A DNA stretch of 63,765 nucleotides, counting the filler, from Hyphochytrium catenoides (taxonomy: Eukaryota > Protista > Hyphochytriomycota), in NCBI GenBank assembly GCA_900088475.1. It is 8 parts of 8 records of this genome, joined end to end, with 100 filler letters (N's around TTAATTAATTAA, not from the genome) between each part and the next. Parts side by side here need not be neighbours in the genome. Positions count along the whole stretch, not along the records: positions 13,905 to 35,747 come from FLMG01000985.1; 7 more parts are not named here. One strand, given 5' to 3'. Under the pieces are notes generated by a model, which made no database searches, had not been told where the DNA came from, and worked only from the letters and a program-made list of their open reading frames with translations. A program made the position numbers and the translations under genes. Below, in pieces: positions 13,905 through 35,847 of the stretch. Every line of letters begins with the position of its first letter. Within the stretch, counting starts at the first letter, position 1.

Positions 13905-14091
13905 GTCCACGTCCCAGTCCACCTTCAGCCGAGGTGGTCCCCAGATCCTCCGCCAACTCAGCTTCGGCATGTCTCTTTCTTCTGAGAAAGAGATTCTTCT
14001 TCCTTTCTCCGTTTTACGAATCTCTGTCTGGAGGAGGAAGAGGTGATGATGATCGGAAGCTGCAGGAGAGAAGAGAAAGCAGGAAATGAAC

Positions 14092-14135
<44 letters not shown>

Positions 14136-14669
14136 CAGTGGAGGTGAACGGAAGGGGATGGCAAGACGAGATTGGAGAAGAAGAGAAAGAGAGAGAAAGA
14201 GCACCCTCGTGCTGAAACAAAGAGAAGAAAGAGAGAGGGGACAAGAGAGAAAGAGAGGGGGGCGACGAGAGACAAAGCTCGTCGTTGCCTCTCATTTTTC
14301 CTCTCTTTTCTCCCTGATACAGACGCAGCTGTCTCTCGGAACACGAGATAGAACAAGCGTTATGCAAGTCCTTAGAAGACAGGAGATGACAGCGAAGGGA
14401 TGGACAGTGGAGAGAAAGAAGCAAGGAAGAGGAGAGAGAGGAGACAAAACGAGAGAGAGAGAGGAAGGGGGAGGAAAGAGAGAGAAAGGGGGAGAAAGAG
14501 AGAATTTAAGGACAAAAAGAGTTGAAAGAACAGCTCTTGAAATGGTGTCAGAGAGGGACGAAAGAACAGAGAGAGGAAGAAAAGCAGGAGAGGAAAAAAG
14601 AGAGAATGAGAGAGAAGAACGAGAAAGAGAACGAGAGAGAGTGTAGACAGAGAGGAGAAAGTAGAGAGT

Positions 14670-14703
<34 letters not shown>

Positions 14704-14811
14704 NNNNNNNNNNNNNNNNNNNNNNNNNNNNNNNCCCTGGGGGGCTAGTGGTGGATCCGTTTGAGAAGCAGATTCTGACCTTTCGCATCTTTTCTCTGCC
14801 TTTTCTCTATG

Positions 14812-15183
14812 AGACTCTCTCTCTCTCTCTGACTCTGTCTCTCTCTCTCTCTCTGACTCTGTCTCTCTCTCTCTCTCTGACTCTCTCTCTCTCTCGCTGA
14901 CTCTCCCTCTCTCTCTCGCTCTCTCTCTCTCTGACTCTCTCTCTCGCTAGCTCTCTCTCTCTCTCTGACTCTTTCTCTCGCTAGCTCGCTCTCTCTCTCT
15001 GACTCTCTCTCTCTCTCTCGCTCTCTCTCTCTGACTCTCTCTCTCTCGCTCTCTCTCTCTGACTCTCTCTCTCTCTCGCTCGCTCTCGCTCTCTGACTCT
15101 CTCTCTCTCTCGCTCTCTCTCTCTGACTCTCTCTCTCTCTCTCTCGCTCTCTCTCTCTGACTCTCTCTCTCTCGCTCGCTCTC
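14812..15183. repeat. Compound (CT)n minisatellite punctuated by CTGA/CGCT
   Basis: Recurrent CTCTCTGACTCTCTCTCTCTCGCT-like units. Confidence 0.8.
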
Positions 15184-15427
15184 TGGTTGACTGCCCGACC
15201 CCTACCTACCCTGGTTACATGTGTGGTTCTGTCTATCACCGCCGTCGGCGCTAACTCTCCTCTTTCCCAGTCGGTTGCTCACGCCTTCTCTTACTTCCTC
15301 ATCGCTGGTGCCCAAGGAGCACTTTGTCTCGCTCCTTTCTCTCTCCCTTCTCTACCCTTGTCTTCCTATCAAATCTCACTATGACTTTTCCTCCGCATCC
15401 TAAAATAACCCTTATCACCTGCATCCA

Positions 15428-15461
<34 letters not shown>

Positions 15462-16172
15462 CTTAACTTTCCTGCTCCCCTTCCTCTCTTCGGCTTCGAC
15501 CTCGTATTGCATTCACACCTCTGAACGACTTGCTTTCCTTGCATTTCTCTTCCGTCTCTCTTCTATTTCATCCGGGGTTTCTCATCTATAGGAAGGATGG
15601 CATTTCCTCCTCCTCAGCTCTACGTCTCCTTATAAAAACATGATCTCTTCCTCTCTGTCTCTCTCTTTCTCTCTTTCTCTCCCTCTCTCTCTTTCTCTCT
15701 CCTATCTTTTTCTTTGTCTGGGTCTCCTCCCTCCTCTTACTTTGGCTCCGGACCTTTCCTTCATGCGGCTGCATTTTTCTCTCATCAGCAGCCCAATAAT
15801 GTGCCGTGCATTCTATCTTTCGCTCTCCCACCACCTTGCCTCGCTCTCGCTTCTTTCGGTTTGTCACTTTCTCTCGGTCTCTTTAGTTCCGCGCTCACAC
15901 TCTCTTTCTCTTTCTCTCTCTCTCTTCCATCCTGCTTTCTTCTCTCTCTATTAAGTTGTGCATGAAGACGTTAAATGATGGTTCATGTCTATAAAGAGCG
16001 CGGTGTTACATTGTTAACTCCTCAGGGAAGAGAGAGGAGGAGGAGAGGAGAGACAGGAGAGGAGATAGAGAGGAAAATATGATGACAAACAGCTCTGGAG
16101 CGATGGCAAACGAAGCAATTTCACGTGTCCAGTCTCTCCGGTTTCCTGTGTTTTACTGTTTGTCTCTTTGTG

Positions 16173-16204
<32 letters not shown>

Positions 16205-16443
16205 GTCTCCTCGCTCTCTCTCGCTCTCTCTCGCCCTGCATCACAGCTCTCTGTTTTTTATGCGAGACTATGGACAGCTATCCACCGAACTTAATAATCC
16301 CGCACTCGCCCACTCCTTCTCTCTCCTCTTTCCTCGGTCTTTCTCTCTGTCTCTGTCTCTGTCTCTCTTTTGTTTCCCTCCTCCTTCCTCCTCCTCCTGA
16401 CGCTCTCTCCCTCTCTCCTCCTCCTCTCTATTCACCGCCCCGA

Positions 16444-18270
16444 CTAGTTGCCATACTGTTCCTTCAGACTCGCCCGTCTGTAGATCCTCCGCACCGAGGC
16501 CGGAGCCTGGACGCGGACGCGGTGCCACGAATTATTTAGCAGTCCGCGCGGGTTCCAGATCGGATCCACGCTCTCCGGCTGAGCGTTATAAGCGTCGTCC
16601 ACAGCCTTACAGCACAGCTCGAACTGGTCGTTGCCCGGGTGCTCGTCCGGGAGAGGAATCTCGGCCTCCCAGAGCGTCCAGGCCCAAGCTCGGCCGGCCG
16701 GCTGTGGGATCTTTCTCAGCTCGGCTGTATGCCATGTCTTTCCTCCGTCTATGGACACGTCCACGCGGATGATTCCTCGTCCTCCTCCGCTCCAGGCGTA
16801 GCCTTTCAAAGTGATCGTCTCATCATCCTCAGGCAGCGTCCAGCCATTGGCAGGCTCCAGGATCGCGGACTGGACGGGCATTTCTTGGATGGCCGGGCCG
16901 GCCATGTCCCAGTTTAGCTTGGCAAAGTCCATGCCGGGCGGGAAGCCCTTGTAGTCTCTCTGCTGCCAGAAGCTCTTGCTCTCCTCAGAATGTGGGACAA
17001 TCTTGGAGACCCACTTGACGTTCCTCGCGCCGACGGTCCCTGGGACGATAAGTCGGACAGGATAGCCGTGATCTCTTGGAATGGGCTCTCCGTTCATCTC
17101 ATAGGCCAGTAGGACGTCTACGTAAGGGTTGAGAACCTTCTCGATTGGGATAGAAGCACCATACGGTGCCCCGTCCACTTCTCTGTCAAGCCCTTCCACC
17201 TGCAGATGGCGCAATCCCTCGACCGTGGAATCAAAGCCAATATAGTCTAGGACGTCCCGCAGTAGCACTCCGGACCACGAGGCATTGCTGACGGCCGCTG
17301 TGCCCCAACTGAGGCCCTTCACGTGCTTCTTATGCGACATCTCGGCTCTGCGGTTGCCTGCGCACTGCAGGGTTGCGGCGATTGTCCTCTTTGGAAACTT
17401 GGTCTTCAGATCTTCTAACGTCAGCGTGGCCTTCTCCTTTATTCCTAAGCCTTCTATCTCTAGCTTGTACTCTCTCTCGTCTATCATTGGCACAGGGAGA
17501 TGGTTGCGCACGAAGAACAGGTCATTGGGAGTGTAGAGCTTGTCAGGCAGGAGCTCCGGTGGCGGTTCAGCGTTGAAAGGCTGTTGAGAGTTAACCGTAA
17601 GCGCGGGGTGGCGCTGTGGATCATTGGCATACGGCCCGGCGGTCGCTGGAGGAAGAGCAAGCTTCTCCTTATCTTTGGGGTCAAGGTTCCCGATGCGATA
17701 AATCTCCAGAAGTTCCTTCACGTCGTCGTGATTATGAGCAGCATAGAGTCTCCAGAAAGGCTCAATGGACTTCCCTGCGGCCAGTAGGATCTTCCCGCCG
17801 CCTGGGTGGCTCTCTATGAAGTTCGTCACATCGTAGACGCCGTCCTGGTAGACCACCCAGATGCCCTTTTCCTTAGATGTGTGCTTGGATATCTCTTCTA
17901 TGGAGAAAGTCGGCAGTCCGTCGAGCTTCTTCCCGGCGTTGGCCGCAGAGATTTTAGGCAGCTTATCAGTCGATTGAATTAGCTTTCCAGCGCGGGAAGA
18001 AGAGGCTTCACAGGAGCTCTCGGAAGGAGGTAGGCTTCCAGCTGCTAGAACAAGGCCGGTTCCAAGACCCAGCAGTCCCGCTGCCATCCAGCGGCCAGCT
18101 TGGCTTGGTTCTTCATGGATGGGGCGATGTTCAGAGCGATAGCTGAGCCTCCTTTGGGCTTGGAGGAGGGCTGGCCTTGCTAAAGGGAGAGAGATCCCGG
18201 ATCTATGACAAAGGCCTGAGAGTCTGACAGGCTTCGTGGCAAGAGATCTGAGTCTGTTGGCCAGCGCCAT
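16444..18270 (-). CDS. SUOX: Sulfite oxidase, mitochondrial type (presequence + cytochrome b5 + Moco + dimerisation domains), single exon
   Basis: 608-aa uninterrupted ORF with an Arg-rich presequence and hydrophobic segment, b5 motif YDVTNFIESHPGG, and FFVRNH, LQCAGNRR (Mo-ligating Cys), DHGYPVR, GARNVKW, GYAWSGGGR, IWNPRG. Confidence 0.96.
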   Translation of the reverse strand: MALANRLRSLATKPVRLSGLCHRSGISLPLARPALLQAQRRLSYRSEHRPIHEEPSQAGRWMAAGLLGLGTGLVLAAGSLPPSESSCEASSSRAGKLIQSTDKLPKISAANAGKKLDGLPTFSIEEISKHTSKEKGIWVVYQDGVYDVTNFIESHPGGGKILLAAGKSIEPFWRLYAAHNHDDVKELLEIYRIGNLDPKDKEKLALPPATAGPYANDPQRHPALTVNSQQPFNAEPPPELLPDKLYTPNDLFFVRNHLPVPMIDEREYKLEIEGLGIKEKATLTLEDLKTKFPKRTIAATLQCAGNRRAEMSHKKHVKGLSWGTAAVSNASWSGVLLRDVLDYIGFDSTVEGLRHLQVEGLDREVDGAPYGASIPIEKVLNPYVDVLLAYEMNGEPIPRDHGYPVRLIVPGTVGARNVKWVSKIVPHSEESKSFWQQRDYKGFPPGMDFAKLNWDMAGPAIQEMPVQSAILEPANGWTLPEDDETITLKGYAWSGGGRGIIRVDVSIDGGKTWHTAELRKIPQPAGRAWAWTLWEAEIPLPDEHPGNDQFELCCKAVDDAYNAQPESVDPIWNPRGLLNNSWHRVRVQAPASVRRIYRRASLKEQYGN

Positions 18271-18603
18271 GGCTCCTTCAAAACAGTGCTAGCACTAGGA
18301 GAGGTCGGAGGGAGAGCGAAGAAGAGAGAGAGGCGCTCTCTTTCAACAGACTTTCCCGAGGACAAGGACCTAAGTCTGCGGAGCTCAACAGACCTGACTC
18401 TCGATGTGCTAACAATGCGTCTCCATCGCTTGAAGGTCCTCTGCCCCACTGCACGATGCTCCTTAACCTTACGATGTCGGCCGGAAAAGGAAATTGTCTG
18501 CAATGACGCAGAACCTCCAGAGCAGATAGAAAGAAACGAACTAACGACGCAGAGATGAAAGGGAGAGAGAGAGAAAGAGAGAGAGAGACAGGGAGGGAGA
18601 GAC

Positions 18604-18657
<54 letters not shown>

Positions 18658-19205
18658 AAGAGACTCTGACAAGGCTCATCTCTAAGACTTCAAGCTGCTG
18701 CTGCCCAGTACCGCATCGCTTTCTCACACCCGAAGAATGGCCGCTAACGGAACCCCTTACTCCTGGGGGAGCTCAGGCCAGGACCAGCCATAATGCATTG
18801 TATTCACTTATGTCCCATGTATAGAGGTTGTGTAACATGGATGACGTACTATCATCATGGACTGTCCCCTATGAGAAGCCCTATGGTGCTCTAAGGCAAG
18901 GAAAGTCCGTTTCGCCCGCAGCAGAAGAAGTGCAAGTGCGGCGCTTGGCCCGCCGGACAGGCAGAGATCTCTGTACCAGGAGCGGAGCGAAGAGTGAAAG
19001 GAGAGAATATGAGATGTAGGCAGAGGCTCCGCCTGTCTTTGGCTAGCAGCAGTAGCGGGAGAGAGAGGTATAGACATAGAGGGCAAGAGAGGTAGCATAA
19101 AGGGAAGGCTTCATCGTGCCTGACCTAGAGGACTGTGTGCTACGACTCTTAGCGATTCCTTTCTAAGATCTCTGCTTGAAGGAGAAAGATAAAATCCTCG
19201 CCACA

Positions 19206-20683: not shown

Positions 20684-21195
20684 AGAAGAGCAGACAGCAC
20701 ATGAGGGCCAACTTATTTATAGGAAGCGCTGTAGCCTTAGTGCCCGAGTAGTGGTGCTGCCGTCCCTGTCCCCATACCGCTAGCGCGTCATCTGGTTGAC
20801 CTCTGCACTGAGTGCCGGTAGATGGCTGAGCCCCTCGCGCTATTAACAAATCTGTAGACGTTCGTCAATGTGAAGGAAAGCTCCTTTTCCCATCTTTTGC
20901 GCACAAAGATCAGTATACTGATAACTGTAACGTAGTTATCGAAGGCTGTATCCCCTCTTGTAAACCTCCACGGGAAGAACTTGGGGTTCATCGACGACGA
21001 ATCTCTGGTGGCACTCTGTCTCGCCCTACAACCAAGAAAGCAATGTTTTCTATATATCCCTTGAACCACTCTGTCTCGAGAGCGTATGCTCACCCTTTGT
21101 CGGTCGTCCTTGGTGTTACTCCTTCCTCACTGTTGTCACCGCCATAGGGCGCCCAGCCGCAGTGTGAAAGGTGATGATGGATCAAGAGGAGAAAG

Positions 21196-21245
<50 letters not shown>

Positions 21246-21654
21246 GTGTGAGAGAGAGAGAGAGAGAGGGAGGGAGAGAGAGAGAGAGAGGGCGAGAGAG
21301 AGAGAGAGAGGACGAGACAGAGAAGAGAGAGACAATAGGGTAAAAAAGAAATAGCGGAGCATGGAGAAGTAGAGAGACAGAGAGATTGTGTGCGTCAAAG
21401 ACACGTGTAAAGCGACATCCTAATACCGTACAACTCTCCTCCAAGCTTGCCATTGAGGCTCATTTGCTGCAGCTTCGGAGGAGCGACCAGCCGTCCTGGA
21501 TCCTTCTCTTCTCTTGCCAACCCAAAGCTGGCTCTTCCATCCTTCCAGCGAGTGAATCATACGTACAGGGACGCCTCAAGCACTGCAGAAAAGTCAAGTC
21601 TGCTGACCGCACGTGAGATAAGCGGCTGCGGCGGCGGAGGAGGAGGAGACGAGG

Positions 21655-27399
<5,745 letters not shown>

Positions 27400-27536
27400 A
27401 GAAAGATTTGTTTCGTATTAACAGTGAAACCTGAGTGCATCGCAGCTGTGTGTTGCCACCTTTATCTTTAGCCTAACCTTAGAGTGGCGGTGTAAAGAAT
27501 CGAACGTTTGAGAGGATAGCTTAGAGAGGGCGTGAC

Positions 27537-27572
<36 letters not shown>

Positions 27573-31418: not shown

Positions 31419-32260
31419 CACTTTATCAGCAAGAAGACGCTAAGACGTTTTAGGCGATGTAGTCGATGTCTTATTTATTCAGTGAACCAATATGGTCCTA
31501 TCACCTTAACTAAGATACTCCCACACGATAAGGCGGCGAACGCCTGCTCCACTGTCTACTCCTTCAGCTGAGAGGCCCTTTAACGATCAAACCTGTTGGA
31601 TTTGTATAAGATCGTTGGACAATCTCATTAGATGAGAGTGCTCTAGTTCGAAGCCCAACTGGGGTCCCACAACGTAGAGCTACTCTGACTATGCCAACGA
31701 TTTCTTCTATTAAACCCTAACGTATTCAGGGATAGAGATAATCTTGTCCAGTACAATAAGTTCTAAAGGTATTCAGGGGTACTGACCATAAGCCATAGAT
31801 ATCAACAGGGACATTTCGTTTGCTTCATATCTCGGCTTCTACAGGGAGTTTGGAACTGGAGCTTGGTATTGGATGTAGGGTCCGGTAGTATGGACGGCAG
31901 TCCCTTTACTGTCCAAATCTCAGCTTCTAACTCTTTCTAGTTGCTGAGATATCGCCATTACAAGATAGCATAGTTAGCTGCTAGTATTATCTATGGCAAT
32001 TAGACCACCATCTAAATGGGTGGCTGTGAGGCATCCGAGTCGTCCTCGTATGCGGATAAGGTCGCATCTTCTGGTCCGGCCGCCACTTCATTCTAATCTC
32101 ACTTTCCAATTTCCCAAGTACCCCACAAGTCAACATCTAAGAGGTTATTGGGCTCCACACAACGCAAGCAAGGCCAACCGGCCAACCTGCCAACCTTCTG
32201 GGGCTTGCGAGTCGAATTGAATTGAATTCGAACTGGAAAGTCAACCCACCATATCAACGA

Positions 32261-32550
32261 CTGTGGTTAGACATCAGGTGAATCGTCGCAAAGTCTTGGA
32301 ATCGCAACACTGTCGAACCAAGAAGATGTCTGCCGACAATTTCATGAAGGCGTTACCAGCACCTCAGTTCCGAGAACAACTTCCGCAACTCGGAATTGTC
32401 CCGTCTACTTCCGCTGTAAGACAAAGTCTACTTTCCGGGGGGGAGGACAAGGCGGAGACCGACGGACACTCAGGAAGTCTGGACCTGCGGGGAGGTGTTG
32501 AGAGCAGAAGCTGACAAAAGCTCTGTTGAGAGCAGAAGCTGACAAAAGCT
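32261..32550 (+). mobile_element. Copia remnant 1: RNase H C-terminus, PPT and LTR start
   Basis: VVRHQVNRRKVLESQHCRTKKMSADNFMKALP is a diverged copy of 34974-35202. GCGGGGAGG PPT is followed by TGTTGAGAG at 32496. The first 28 bp of the LTR are tandemly duplicated (32496-32550). Confidence 0.85.
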
Positions 32551-32598
32551 TTAAAAGGCTCACAGTTCCAGACTCTATCTGACGAGAGGAAGAAAGAA

Positions 32599-33231
32599 TG
32601 TTAGATTTTTATCATTGGATGGTGAGCACTTTGAATTAATATTGGGGGGTGTCTGGATAAACCGGAGAAAGGTTTTGTACGGTCCGGGATTTGAACCCAG
32701 GACCTCTATCTTGATGCCGACACCCTAACCAGTATGCACCATACACCAAACGTACTCTTTAACTAATCTCGGTTTTGTTTATATACCAGGTTTTTCCCCT
32801 CTGCGTCGTCCGCTGTACACTTTTTGGTTTCAGCGTCGATCACAGTTCAACACTCCCCCGGAATCTAGAGAACTCTGTAAGCTCTAGATTCAAATGGAAC
32901 TGTGATGGTCATCCGTGGTCACAGAACCGAATGGCTCAATATATTGCCCGAGTTGAATCGCTCGGAGCGTACACCATGTTAGATTTGATCATTGGATGGT
33001 GAGCACTTTGAATTAATATTGGGGGGGTGTCTGGATAAACCGGAGAAAAGTTTTGTACGGTCCGGGATCTGAACCCAGGACCTCTGTCTTTGATGCCGAC
33101 ACCCTAACCAGTATGCACCATACACCAAACGTACTCTTTAACTAATCTCGGTTTTGTTTATATACCAGGTTTTTCCCCTCTGCGTCGTCCGCTGTACACT
33201 TTTTGGTTTCAGCGTCGATCACAGTTCAACA
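32599..33231 (-). mobile_element. TRIM copy A: LTR 32599-32852, internal 32853-32976, LTR 32977-33231; tRNA-like gene in each LTR
   Basis: ~254-bp direct repeats with TGTT...AACA ends. On the minus strand, PBS TGGTGTACGCTCCGAG abuts the 5' LTR and PPT GGGGGAG abuts the 3' LTR. No clean TSD (AAGAA / GAAAG). Confidence 0.9.
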
Positions 33232-33964
33232 GAAAGCACAAAAAAAAGTGTTTCAGAGTTATATAACTAGGTTATTATCACTACTAGGTAAGTCATCATG
33301 TGACGTCAAGAAGTAGTAGTAACTGGGTCTAGTAGTCTATACGAGACACAGTTACTCTGCAGAAGAACCAGACAACGTGATAGGACAGCAGGACAGGAAC
33401 ATCTGGTTTGTAAGCTAAAGCGCAGCATTTATGGGCTCAAACAAAGTCCTCGCCAATGGAACCTTGCGTCTACATCAACAGGTCCGGGGAGGATGGCAAG
33501 CCGACCATCGTTTCGACTTTCGTAGACGACCTGCTGATCTTCGCGCCAAGCAACAATCGTGCGGATCAAGTTAAAGGACTTCTCAAGGACAAATTTGATG
33601 TGAAGGACTTAGGAGAACTCCAATACTTCCTAGGAGTCGAGACAATCGGAAGATTTACCTTCGCCAACGAAGATTTATTCAAGACCTTCTGAAGCGCTAT
33701 GGCATGGGAGATTGTAACCCAATCAGCACGCCTGTTACCCCCGGTGAAAAGCTACCCAAGGCAGACCTCTCTCCACACTGACTTCTGAAGAGGTACCGTA
33801 CAGAATGCTGTTGACCGTTTTATGCATCTGATGGTAGCCTCCAGGCCGGATATAGCCTTCGCGGTAACAATCGGTTAGCCAGCATATGACTAACTATAGA
33901 CAGACTCACTGGGCCGCTGTGAAGCGGATACTGAGATATCTGAAAGGGACTGCAGACCACTTCT

Positions 33965-34597
33965 TGTTAGATATTTATCATTGGATGGTGAGCACTTTGA
34001 ATTAATATTGGGGGTGTCTGGATATACCGGAGAAAAGTTCTGTACGCTCCGAGATTCGAACCCAGGACCTCTGTCTTTGATGCCGACACCCTAACCAGTA
34101 TGCACCATACACCAAACGTACTTTTGACTAATCTCCGTTTTTCTTTATATACCAGGGATTTTCCCCTCTGCGTCATCCGCTGTACACTTTTTGGTTTCAG
34201 CATCGATCACAGTTCAACACTCCCCCGGAATCTAGAGAACTCTGTAAGCTCTAGATTTCAAATGGAACTGTGATGGTCATCCGTGGTCACAGAACCGAAT
34301 GGCTCACTATATTGCCCGAGTTAAATCGCTCGGAGCGTACACCATGTTAGATATTTATCATTGGATGGTGAGCACTTTGAATTAATATTGGGGGTGTCTG
34401 GATATACCGGAGAAAAGTTTTGTACGCTCCGGGATTCGAACCCAGGACCTCTGTCTTTGATGCCGAAACCCTAACCAGTATGCACCATACACCAAACGTA
34501 CTTTTGACTAATCTCGGTTTTGTTTATATACCAGGTTTTTCCCCTCTGCGTCATCCGCTGTACACTTTTTGGTTTCAGCATCGATCACAGTTCAACA
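33965..34597 (-). mobile_element. TRIM copy B: LTR 33965-34219, internal 34220-34344, LTR 34345-34597; 5-bp TSD CTTCT
   Basis: Same architecture as copy A. Perfect TSD CTTCT at 33960-33964 and 34598-34602. Removing the element rejoins the Copia frame LKGTADHFLCLGG. Confidence 0.95.
34041..34121 (-). ncRNA. tRNA-like Pol III unit in a TRIM LTR (other copies 32676-32755, 33054-33134, 34421-34501)
   Basis: Minus strand reads GTACGTT-TG-GTGT-ATGGTGC-ATAC-[27 nt]-AGGTC-CTGGG-TTCGAAT-CTCGG-AGCGTAC-A-GAACTTTT. It shows a 7-bp acceptor stem, 4-bp D stem, 5-bp T stem, A box TGGTGTATGG and B box GGTTCGAATC. The anticodon arm is non-canonical. Expression is not shown. Confidence 0.75.
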
Positions 34598-35847
34598 CTT
34601 CTTATGTCTAGGAGGAGAAGCAAGTCCAGACATCAATCAGAGTCCAGACTACAACTCTTTGCAGATGCAGACTAGGCAAATGATCCTATGGACAGGAAAT
34701 CCATTTCAGGCTACTTTCTTAAACTGGGGACTGGTGCTTTCAGTTGAAAGGCTAAGAAGCAAGACATAGTGGCTTCTTCAACCACTGAAGCTGAGTGCAA
34801 CTCACTTTGGACTGGAGCCAAACATGCAGAACGCATCTCTTATTTCTTAGTAGAGGAGCTTCAGTATCCACTGAGTAGACCCATTTTCGCACATCAAGAA
34901 GACAACAAGAGCACAATAACAGTGTGCGAGATGCCGAGACCAAAATCGAAATATATTGATAATGTCAAACACTGTGTGGTTAGAGACCAGGTGAATCGCA
35001 AGGTCTTGGAATTGCAACACTGTCCAACCAAGAAGATGTCTGCCGACATTCTCACGAAGGCGTTACCAGCACCTCAGTTCCGAGAACTTCTTCCGCAACT
35101 CGGGATTGTCCCGTCCACTTCCGTCGTAAGACAAAGTCTACTTTCCGGGGAGGACAAGGCGTAGGCCGACGGACACTCAGGAAGTCTGGACCTGCGGGGA
35201 GGTGTTGAGAGCAGAAGAAGCTGATAGGGCCTGACACTGTGCGCTGCTTTCTCTCGCTCGCCGCCACGCTGTGATGAACTTTTTTACAGAGCTGGGTGGC
35301 AATGCCTGAAGCTTCTTCTGTATGAGCACAATCTAGATGAAACGATAACAAAGGGACTTGGATATTGATGTGTGATGGAGATTTCTCTGAATGATCACTT
35401 AGTGCTGAGAGCCTGGTGGTCTGGACTCGAGATCTTTTGCTCGGCCCAGCTTCCCTCATCATCATCTCTCTCTTCTCCTCTGCTGCTCCTGTGTTCTTCT
35501 GGTAATTCTTCTCACACCCCTCTTCTTTCCCATAACACAGGTGTACCCGTAACGTCTATGTCCCTGAGAGCTAGTGTGTGTAGAGAGTGACTACTGTACT
35601 ACTGACAACGAACATAGTAGCACTCAACACTCCCCCTCCTACCTAGCTTCTCTGGATCATTAGTGGTGAGGGTCGAATCAACTCACCTAATTGTCGGTCT
35701 CCCTCACTCTCTCCCCCTCAGACGAAGCTAGGTGGGTAGTGGCAAGANNNNNNNNNNNNNNNNNNNNNNNNNNNNNNNNNNNNNNNNNNNNTTAATTAAT
35801 TAANNNNNNNNNNNNNNNNNNNNNNNNNNNNNNNNNNNNNNNNNNNN

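What the first reader, a model, noticed from the sequence alone, without database searches (positions are those of the whole stretch)
32599..34597. Miniature LTR retrotransposon whose LTR-borne tRNA-like RNA matches its own primer-binding site: candidate self-encoded RT primer
Seen: the PBS of both TRIM copies (minus strand TGGTGTACGCTCCGAG; 32961-32976 and 34329-34344) requires a primer ending ...CTCGGAGCGTACA-CCA. The tRNA-like unit in the LTR at 34041-34121 ends in exactly CTCGGAGCGTAC-A (T stem, acceptor strand, discriminator), followed by a short trailer and TTTT. Adding CCA gives a 16/16 match. The 34421-34501 copy gives 14 contiguous matches, and the copy-A LTRs carry one further mismatch. 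Established: LTR elements normally prime on host tRNAs, the PBS is re-copied from the primer each cycle, and RNase P, RNase Z and the CCA-adding enzyme recognise mainly the acceptor/T arms, which are intact here while the anticodon arm is not. TRIMs with Pol III-type modules in their LTRs are known (Cassandra, 5S-derived; Helenus, tRNA-like), but I am not aware of one where the module is the cognate primer. Inference: the element makes a private tRNA-mimic primer, which would make priming independent of host tRNAs.
Basis: partly seen in the sequence, partly recalled or inferred. Interest (0 to 1): 0.93.

Follow-up and report, generated by a model that had tools for sequence, protein, structure and literature searches.

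The report
Mini retrotransposon carrying its primer's look-alike
Two copies of a tiny non-coding LTR retrotransposon carry, in each terminal repeat, a degenerate tRNA-like unit whose 3' end plus CCA matches the element's own primer-binding site; published tRNA-bearing miniature elements (Helenus) were reported not to show this, but the sequence alone cannot say whether the element makes its own primer or uses a related host tRNA.

Summary
Two 633-nt TRIM copies lie on the minus strand (A 32599-33231, B 33965-34597). Each has 253-255-nt TG..CA LTRs, a PBS, a PPT and a 5-bp target duplication. A related Copia contig (L046) lacks both insertions, so both are real transposition events.

Every LTR carries an 80-81-nt tRNA-like unit in the element's sense, with a TATA box upstream, a B box, an intact acceptor stem and T arm, and a T-run just downstream. 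The PBS is complementary to the unit's 3' end plus a non-templated CCA. An 11-mer match by chance is expected about 1e-4 times per LTR.

The 16/16 match exists in only one of four LTRs and looks like a post-insertion C>T change. The ancestral state is 14 contiguous matches (15/16), and copy A has a further mismatch. The PBS is identical in both copies while the LTR 3' ends vary, and PBS bases 17-18 do not fit the LTR unit.

The element is a Helenus-type TRIM from an unidentified eukaryote and is absent from Kojima's newly reported consensus set (Data S1). Kojima (2024) states that no Helenus shows LTR-PBS complementarity, so this is an exception.

My estimates are about 0.5 for priming by a host tRNA of the same lineage and about 0.3 for a self-encoded primer. 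No host tRNA set or further copies could be reached, so the question stays open.

The parts
32599..33231 (-). TRIM copy A (633 nt), inserted in the 3' LTR of a Copia fragment
   Evidence: A is 94.5% identical to copy B. Contig L046 shows the unoccupied site.
32977..33231 (-). Copy A 5' LTR (255 nt, TG..CA)
   Evidence: Alignment A1. It differs from A's 3' LTR by 4 mismatches and 3 gap events.
33054..33134 (-). tRNA-like unit in A's 5' LTR. Its 3' end is CCCGGACCGTACA, two mismatches to the primer implied by the PBS.
   Evidence: ARAGORN at relaxed threshold; fold.
32961..32976 (-). Copy A primer-binding site, TGGTGTACGCTCCGAG
   Evidence: Read directly. It abuts the 5' LTR end and is identical to B's PBS.
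32853..32976 (-). Copy A internal region (124 nt, non-coding), running from the PBS to the PPT (GGGGGAG at 32853-32859)
   Evidence: It differs from B's internal region by 2 mismatches and 1 gap.
32599..32852 (-). Copy A 3' LTR (254 nt)
32676..32755 (-). tRNA-like unit in A's 3' LTR (80 nt). The T-run after it is reduced to three T.
   Evidence: (Rfam tRNA 16.8 bits, below the threshold of 29).
33965..34597 (-). TRIM copy B (633 nt), inserted in the pol gene of a degenerate Copia. The 5-bp target duplication CTTCT is at 33960-33964 and 34598-34602.
   Evidence: L046 carries a single CTTCT at the homologous place.
34345..34597 (-). Copy B 5' LTR (253 nt)
   Evidence: It differs from B's 3' LTR by 6 mismatches and 2 gap events.
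34421..34501 (-). tRNA-like unit in B's 5' LTR. Its 3' end is CCCGGAGCGTACA, giving 14 contiguous matches to the PBS once CCA is added.
   Evidence: ARAGORN; fold.
34523..34530 (-). TATATAAA, 29 to 22 nt upstream of the first base of the tRNA-like unit. The same motif is present in all four LTRs.
   Evidence: Read directly; invariant columns in alignment A1.
34413..34416 (-). TTTT, starting 5 nt after the discriminator base. It is a candidate Pol III terminator, present in 3 of 4 LTRs.
34329..34344 (-). Copy B primer-binding site, TGGTGTACGCTCCGAG
34220..34344 (-). Copy B internal region (125 nt), running from the PBS to the PPT (GGGGGAG at 34220-34226)
33965..34219 (-). Copy B 3' LTR (255 nt)
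34041..34121 (-). tRNA-like unit in B's 3' LTR. This is the only unit ending CTCGGAGCGTACA, which gives the 16/16 match with CCA.
33380..35202 (+). Degenerate Copia pol (RT to C-terminus, with stops and frameshifts), interrupted by copy B. Its PPT and LTR start (GGGGAGG then TGTTGAG, at 35196-35209) resemble the TRIM's (GGGGGAG then TGTTGAA), so it is a candidate autonomous partner family.
   Evidence: Translations; P0121 is 92% identical.

Best explanation
This is a Helenus-type (TRIMp3) miniature LTR retrotransposon, mobilised in trans by a Copia element.

Each LTR holds a TATA box, then a degenerate tRNA-derived unit in the element's sense, then a short T-run. The unit most likely acts as the promoter and as the start of the R region.

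Reverse transcription starts at a PBS that pairs with a CCA-tailed RNA ending CUCGGAGCGUACA-CCA. I think that primer is most likely a cellular tRNA of the same lineage as the LTR unit. On this reading, the unit descends from the cognate primer tRNA or a close isodecoder. It may have been captured because that tRNA is the small RNA packaged with the element's RNA. The PBS then stays fixed because it is re-copied from the host tRNA at every cycle, while the LTR copies drift.

Shown: the anatomy, the two insertions, and the complementarity in register with CCA.
Inferred: Pol III or TATA-driven transcription, the Copia partnership, and the identity of the primer.
For: - The TRIM anatomy and the real insertions are supported, and by the empty sites in L046.
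- The PBS TGG pairs with CCA, but the LTR encodes AAA or GAA there. The primer is therefore a CCA-tailed RNA and the PBS is not a DNA-level copy of the LTR.
- The PBS and its next base are identical in A and B. The LTR 3' ends differ from the PBS at position 62 in three of four LTRs and at position 67 in both A LTRs. Neither copy's parent had an LTR that would template its own PBS.
- PBS bases 17-18 are CG, whereas the LTR unit would give AT. Primer copying normally reaches position 59 of a tRNA (established knowledge of retroviral plus-strand strong-stop synthesis).
- The PBS segment CCGAG forms a perfect 5-bp hairpin with CUCGG downstream in the element's RNA. This fits a primer whose T stem is CCGAG/CUCGG, which differs from the LTR's CUGGG/CCCGG.
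- The PPT and LTR terminus resemble those of the Copia into which both copies are inserted. Kojima likewise infers that fungal Helenus with 5-bp target duplications are mobilised by Copia.
- Host-tRNA priming needs no new biology.
Against: - No host tRNA with this 3' end was found. The piece contains no other tRNA.
- A scan of JGI metagenome contigs for a T loop followed by this 3' end gave 44 places, none inside a predicted tRNA. That collection samples eukaryotic hosts poorly, so this is weak evidence.
- The unit's D and anticodon arms are scrambled (Rfam 16.8 bits). Despite that, its acceptor stem is 7/7 paired and its last 11 nt equal the primer in copy B. At roughly 20% neutral divergence, 11 unchanged bases have about a 9% chance (my estimate), which hints at a constraint tying the LTR 3' end to the primer.
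- Kojima found no such match in any Helenus family, so plain shared ancestry rarely leaves this signature.
Confidence: 0.5

Rival explanations
1. Self-encoded or family-encoded primer. The LTR unit is transcribed from its own TATA and B-box promoter and terminates at the T-run. It is then trimmed by RNase Z, given CCA, and used as the primer at the PBS of TRIM RNAs. This would make priming independent of host tRNAs.
For: - The match is in exact register with CCA. It is 14 contiguous in the ancestral B LTR and 16/16 in one LTR.
- The acceptor stem (7 bp) and T arm are intact although the rest of the cloverleaf is scrambled. Those two arms are what RNase P, RNase Z and the CCA-adding enzyme need (established knowledge of minihelix substrates).
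- A TATA box lies at -29 to -22, so transcription would start at about the first base of the unit. TTTT starts 5 nt after the discriminator.
- No genuine tRNA with this 3' end was found in the collections scanned.
- The PBS is re-copied from the primer in each cycle, so a switch to an abundant, co-localised tRNA mimic is mechanistically easy.
Against: - Both copies' ancestral LTRs mismatch their own PBS at position 62, and copy A also at 67, yet the PBS is the same in both.
- PBS bases 17-18 do not fit the unit. An unmodified mimic should allow a longer copied stretch, not a shorter one.
- Complementarity beyond the PBS is weak (p about 0.03-0.2).
- The A box is poor, and the T4 run is a weak terminator in many eukaryotes.
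- Only two copies are available, so there is no covariation test, and there are no expression data.
Confidence: 0.3
2. Cis-acting RNA structure. In a full-length transcript that starts at the 5' LTR unit, the unit's 3' half pairs with the PBS about 80 nt downstream. This could mask the PBS or present it, as U5-leader stems do in retroviruses, or it could act as a Tf1-like fold-back primer. In this reading the complementarity is selected in cis.
For: The minimum-energy fold of the 217-nt read-through RNA pairs the unit's T arm and 3' acceptor strand with the PBS region in one long helix. The duplex energy with the B-type unit is -44 to -47 kcal/mol.
Against: - The fold is no more stable than shuffled sequences (z = -0.63).
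- The PBS TGG pairs with CCA and not with the templated AAA or GAA, which points to a trans primer.
- Tf1-type priming uses the first bases of the transcript, and these are not complementary to the PBS here.
- Copy A has two mismatches in the helix.
Confidence: 0.07
3. Chance resemblance between the PBS and an unrelated part of the LTR.
For: None beyond the small sample of two copies.
Against: About 1.2e-4 exact 11-mer matches are expected per LTR. In addition, the match ends exactly at the discriminator of a tRNA-like fold, so that TGG faces CCA.
Confidence: 0.01

Closest known systems
Helenus (TRIMp3), Kojima 2024, PMC10886601
   Same: - It is a miniature non-coding LTR element. Published Helenus span 311-1263 bp; this one is 633 bp.
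- A tRNA-derived unit lies in sense in each LTR, followed by a T-run.
- It has a PBS and a PPT.
- It has 5-bp target duplications and a Copia-type partner, as in fungal and plant Helenus.
   Different: - Kojima states that no Helenus family shows complementarity between the LTR unit and its PBS; this one does.
- Most fungal Helenus prime on the anticodon loop of a tRNA, whereas this one uses a full 3' end with CCA.
- None of its signature words occur in the published consensus set.
- The host is neither a rust fungus, an animal nor a plant that is close to anything in the protein database.
Cassandra and Ajax (TRIMs with a 5S rRNA module in the LTR)
   Same: A Pol III gene-derived module with a promoter and terminator sits inside each LTR of a TRIM. 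Cassandra modules have been reported to track host 5S gene changes (Maiwald 2024, title only, seen as a citation). That is a precedent for an LTR module staying close to its host gene.
   Different: The module here is tRNA-like, not 5S. There is no 5S hit in Rfam even at E<=10. A 5S module has no relation to priming.
Tf1/Tf2 self-priming LTR retrotransposons of fission yeast (from my own knowledge; mentioned in papers listed)
   Same: The element supplies its own primer, so priming does not depend on host tRNA.
   Different: Tf1 uses the first 11 nt of its own mRNA, cut by RNase H, with no tRNA shape and no CCA. Here the complementary stretch is internal, ends at a discriminator base and needs CCA.
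Ty1/Copia-type tRNA priming with extended primer contacts (from my own knowledge)
   Same: The element has a Copia-dependent PBS at the 3' end of a tRNA. There may be extra pairing with the primer's T arm just downstream of the PBS.
   Different: Ty1 uses host initiator tRNA-Met and carries no copy of it. The extended pairing here is statistically weak.

Membership tests
TRIM (terminal-repeat retrotransposon in miniature) | Under about 1 kb, two direct LTRs with TG..CA ends, and no coding capacity | tested here: met
   Each copy is 633 nt, with 253-255-nt LTRs and a 124-125-nt internal region. Translations of stop-free stretches found nothing in two protein databases.
TRIM (terminal-repeat retrotransposon in miniature) | A PBS next to the 5' LTR, a PPT next to the 3' LTR, and a target-site duplication | tested here: met
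   The PBS begins with TGG at the LTR end. The PPT is GGGGGAG. Copy B has a perfect CTTCT duplication. Copy A has GAAAG on both sides, with two extra bases on one side. Contig L046 shows the empty sites.
Helenus / TRIMp3 | A tRNA-derived sequence in each LTR | tested here: inconclusive
   ARAGORN calls all four units, two of them only at a relaxed threshold. The acceptor stem and T arm are tRNA-grade. The Rfam tRNA model scores only 16.8 bits against a threshold of 29, and the isotype cannot be determined.
Helenus / TRIMp3 | Conserved Pol III box A (TRGCY...YGG) and box B (GGTTC) | tested here: inconclusive
   Box B (GGTTCGAATC, or GGTTCAAATC / GGTTCAGATC in copy A) is present in all four LTRs. 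Box A reads TGGTG...TGG and does not fit TRGCY (motif definition).
Helenus / TRIMp3 | Sequence relationship to a published Helenus family | tested here: not met
   Ten signature words of 8-12 nt were checked. Eight (two LTR-end words, three module words and three PBS or 3'-end words) are absent from Kojima's Data S1. The two 8-mers TGGTGTAC and GTACACCA occur there 2 and 5 times, and the four occurrences shown are in unrelated contexts. Only the generic box B word is otherwise shared. This was a word search, not an alignment. An independent origin is compatible with the family definition, which is structural.
Helenus / TRIMp3 | Transcription of the module by RNA polymerase III | not testable with these tools
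   This needs expression data. Kojima says it is not validated for Helenus either.
Cassandra / Ajax | A 5S rRNA-derived sequence in the LTR | tested here: not met
   No 5S rRNA match in 32599-34597, even at E<=10.
Tf1-type self-priming elements | The first bases of the transcript are complementary to the PBS | tested here: not met
   The unit starts GUACGUU, which is not complementary to the PBS. The complementary stretch is nt 69-81 of the unit and needs CCA. The transcription start is inferred from the TATA position and was not measured.
   The match is 16/16 in one LTR, 15/16 in one, and 14/16 in two.
With only two copies, the PBS does not follow the LTR differences at positions 62 and 67.

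The most novel reading that the evidence does not exclude
The LTR unit is a working tRNA mimic. It would be transcribed from the LTR, trimmed, CCA-tailed and used as the reverse-transcription primer of its own family, and perhaps of its Copia partner. This would be the first LTR retrotransposon that carries the gene for its own tRNA-type primer.
Probability: 0.3. Interest if true: 0.85.

Novelty: new variant of a known kind. Interest (0 to 1): 0.6.

Why it matters
LTR retroelements are thought to depend on host tRNAs for priming, with fold-back self-priming in the Tf1 group as the known exception. Kojima (2024) raised the possibility that a TRIM's LTR-borne tRNA-like unit could be its primer, and dismissed it because no family showed the required complementarity. 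This element shows it, in register with CCA.

If the unit is the primer, it would be a new way for a parasite of a parasite to free itself from a host factor. It would also be a natural example of primer switching through PBS re-copying.

If the primer is instead a host tRNA, the element still indicates that an LTR module can descend from the cognate primer tRNA. That would point to primer capture as one origin of Helenus-type LTRs, alongside the SINE-insertion route Kojima proposed. Either way, it extends Helenus-type elements to a host outside rusts, animals and Selaginella.

Tried and rejected
- **More copies or a host tRNA.** A scan of JGI metagenome contigs for a T loop followed by the 3' end gave 44 places. 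None is this TRIM and none lies in a predicted tRNA. Twenty-three belong to an unrelated repeat. The exact PBS in viral contigs gave one chance hit in a phage-like contig. An 18-mer from the unit gave no hit in viral contigs and one chance hit in a bacterial MAG.
- **TRIM copies mis-called as ORFs.** Translated stop-free stretches of the TRIM found nothing in either protein database.
- **Identifying the host.** The sulfite oxidase ORF is at best 60% identical (about 58% for the top-ranked hits) to cnidarian, fish and oomycete proteins, and it is not on record as an exact sequence.
- **Literature search for the PBS or 3'-end words.** This returned only unrelated PCR primers.
- **T-arm record next to the PBS.** I tested whether the 16 nt next to the PBS record the primer's T arm. 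Alignment and duplex shuffles give p of about 0.03-0.2, so I do not rely on it.
- **Isotype of the unit.** ARAGORN gives Pro-like with a 4-base anticodon, Arg with an 'intron', or nothing, and Rfam picks a different register. I rejected any isotype call. My own recollection that the T arm resembles tRNA-Thr/Pro and the D region resembles tRNA-Gln/Val was not tested.
- **Selection on the unit.** Variable columns are about as frequent inside the unit as in the rest of the LTR (my rough count on alignment A1: about 7 of 81 against about 15 of 172). Two copies give no power.
- **The partner's PBS.** No 5' LTR or PBS of the Copia lies in the piece or in L046.
Full report
**What is there**

Reading 32000-35747 together with the repeat search, the LTR alignment A1 and exact boundaries shows two copies of one miniature LTR retrotransposon on the minus strand.

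| | Copy A | Copy B |
|---|---|---|
| Whole element | 32599-33231 | 33965-34597 |
| 3' LTR | 32599-32852 | 33965-34219 |
| Internal region | 32853-32976 | 34220-34344 |
| 5' LTR | 32977-33231 | 34345-34597 |

- The LTRs are 253-255 nt, begin TGTTGAAC and end TCTAACA.
- The internal region is 124-125 nt. It starts with the PBS TGGTGTACGCTCCGAG and ends with the PPT GGGGGAG.
- A and B are 94.5% identical.
- The two LTRs of A differ by 4 mismatches and 3 gap events. Those of B differ by 6 mismatches and 2 gap events. Both are therefore old insertions.

**Both are real insertions**

- Both copies sit in fragments of a degenerate Copia.
- The Copia C-terminal ORF found a 92%-identical protein (P0121). 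Its 991-nt ENA metagenome contig (L046) aligns at 84-89% to the window on both sides of both TRIMs and lacks them.
- At B's site, L046 has a single CTTCT where the window has CTTCT, then copy B, then CTTCT.
- At A's site, inside the Copia LTR, the window has GAAAG on both sides, with two extra bases between the duplication and the LTR on one side.
- The Copia's PPT and LTR start (GGGGAGG then TGTTGAG) resemble the TRIM's (GGGGGAG then TGTTGAA). This fits mobilisation by this or a related Copia, as Kojima infers for fungal Helenus.

**The LTR unit**

- ARAGORN calls an 81-nt tRNA-like unit, in the sense of the element, at 34041-34121 and 34421-34501. At a relaxed threshold it also calls 33054-33134 and 32676-32755.
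- The acceptor stem is 7 bp in B, including one G-U pair. In A it has one mismatch.
- The T arm has a good box B.
- The D and anticodon arms are poor. The 'anticodon' has four bases, and other options give other isotypes.
- The Rfam tRNA model gives nothing at E<=1 over the piece and 16.8 bits against a threshold of 29 in a restricted search, in a different register. There is no 5S match.
- TATATAAA lies 29-22 nt upstream of the unit's first base in all four LTRs. TTTT starts 5 nt after the discriminator in three of them.
- This is the architecture of Helenus/TRIMp3. The family's signature words are absent from Kojima's consensus file, apart from two generic 8-mers that occur there in unrelated contexts.

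**The match**

The PBS implies a primer ending CTCGGAGCGTACA-CCA. The four LTR units end as follows.

| LTR | 3' end of unit | Templated bases after it |
|---|---|---|
| A 5' | CCCGGACCGTACA | AAA |
| A 3' | CCCGGACCGTACA | AAA |
| B 5' | CCCGGAGCGTACA | AAA |
| B 3' | CTCGGAGCGTACA | GAA |

- An exact 11-mer match is expected about 1.2e-4 times per LTR. The match also ends exactly at the discriminator, so that TGG faces CCA.
- CCA is not templated in the LTR. The PBS therefore records a CCA-tailed RNA and is not a DNA duplication of the LTR.
- Only one of four LTRs has T at position 62. B's two LTRs were identical at insertion and A has C in both, so the perfect match is most simply a later C>T change in one LTR.

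**Which RNA is the primer?**

The PBS is re-copied from the primer in each cycle (established retroviral biology), so it reads out the primer actually used.

Points for a primer that is not these LTRs:
- The PBS and the next base are identical in A and B, while their LTR 3' ends differ from it at position 62, and in A also at 67.
- PBS bases 17-18 are CG, where the LTR unit would give AT.
- In the element's RNA, the PBS segment CCGAG pairs perfectly with CUCGG 8 nt downstream. This fits a primer T stem of CCGAG/CUCGG rather than the LTR's CUGGG/CCCGG. However, the similarity of that flank to a T arm is statistically weak (p about 0.03-0.2).

Points for a functional link between the LTR unit and the primer:
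- The unit keeps a fully paired acceptor stem and an 11-nt identity with the primer, while the rest of the cloverleaf is scrambled.
- Kojima searched all Helenus families for this complementarity and found none. Shared isotype alone therefore seldom leaves this trace.
- Among 44 matches in JGI metagenome contigs to a T loop followed by this 3' end, none lies in a predicted tRNA. That collection samples eukaryotic hosts poorly.

In a read-through RNA, the unit's 3' half is predicted to pair with the PBS in cis, but the fold is no more stable than shuffled sequences.

**Verdict**

- The element is a Helenus-type TRIM of a new family in an unidentified eukaryote. Its sulfite oxidase is at best 60% identical to cnidarian, fish and oomycete proteins (about 58% for the top-ranked hits).
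- It is an exception to the published statement that Helenus LTR units are not complementary to their PBS.
- I put about 0.5 on a host tRNA of the same lineage as the unit, with the unit probably descended from the cognate primer.
- I put about 0.3 on the unit, or a sister copy, being the primer.
- I put about 0.07 on a purely cis role.
- I put about 0.01 on chance.
- The remainder covers mixed or unforeseen cases.
- The deciding data are the host tRNA set, the other family copies, the Copia partner's PBS and CCA-tailed small RNAs. None of these could be reached with these tools.

No contig here looks human.

Noticed in passing
L046 (ENA ERZ27257071, contig k141_290298, 991 nt): This metagenome contig carries the same Copia family (84-89% nucleotide identity, 92% protein identity) without either TRIM. 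It gives the empty sites and shows that a relative of the host occurs in that sample.
   Followed up: yes
window 16444-18270 (-): An intron-free 608-aa ORF encodes an animal-type sulfite oxidase (cytochrome b5, Moco-binding and dimerisation domains). The best database identities are 51-60% (about 58% for the top-ranked hits), spread over cnidarians, fishes and oomycetes, so the host is not close to any sequenced proteome in the collection.
   Followed up: partly
window 21888-22571 and 25235-26188 (+): These ORFs have a DUSP domain hit and a weak USP7 C-terminal hit. They are probably exons of one ubiquitin-specific protease gene.
   Followed up: no
window 14040-15190, 15425-15465, 16160-16235, 18550-18665, 21185-21335, 27523-27572: Long (GA)n/(CT)n microsatellite tracts lie here. 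They produce all the sub-threshold plant microRNA 'hits' in Rfam, which are artefacts of low complexity.
   Followed up: partly
window 32496-32551 (+): There is a perfect 27-nt tandem repeat (copies 28 nt apart) of the first bases of the Copia LTR (TGTTGAGAGCAGAAGCTGACAAAAGCT). L046 has one copy.
   Followed up: partly
window 33232-33380 (+): After copy A, the sequence follows the Copia LTR of L046 for only about 20 nt. It then diverges until the Copia RT fragment begins. The join between the two Copia fragments is unexplained and may be a deletion or recombination.
   Followed up: no
L001, L002, L005, L012, L034 and 18 more loci (JGI metagenome contigs Ga01233xx, Ga0268261, JGI20166J26741 and others): An interspersed repeat ends in GGTTCGA-CCCCGGACCGTACA followed by GCCCGTAGC..GTCGCTATACC. 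It shares the T arm and 3' strand of copy A's unit but nothing else. Rfam and ARAGORN do not call it a tRNA. It is probably a tRNA-derived SINE of some eukaryote in those samples.
   Followed up: partly
window 34220-34300 (-), internal region of the TRIM: There are two near-perfect hairpins (CUGUGA..UCACAG and CUAGAG..CUCUAG) between the PBS and the PPT, conserved in both copies. The internal region differs less between A and B (2 mismatches in 125) than the LTRs do (9-14 in 255). The numbers are too small to call this selection.
   Followed up: partly
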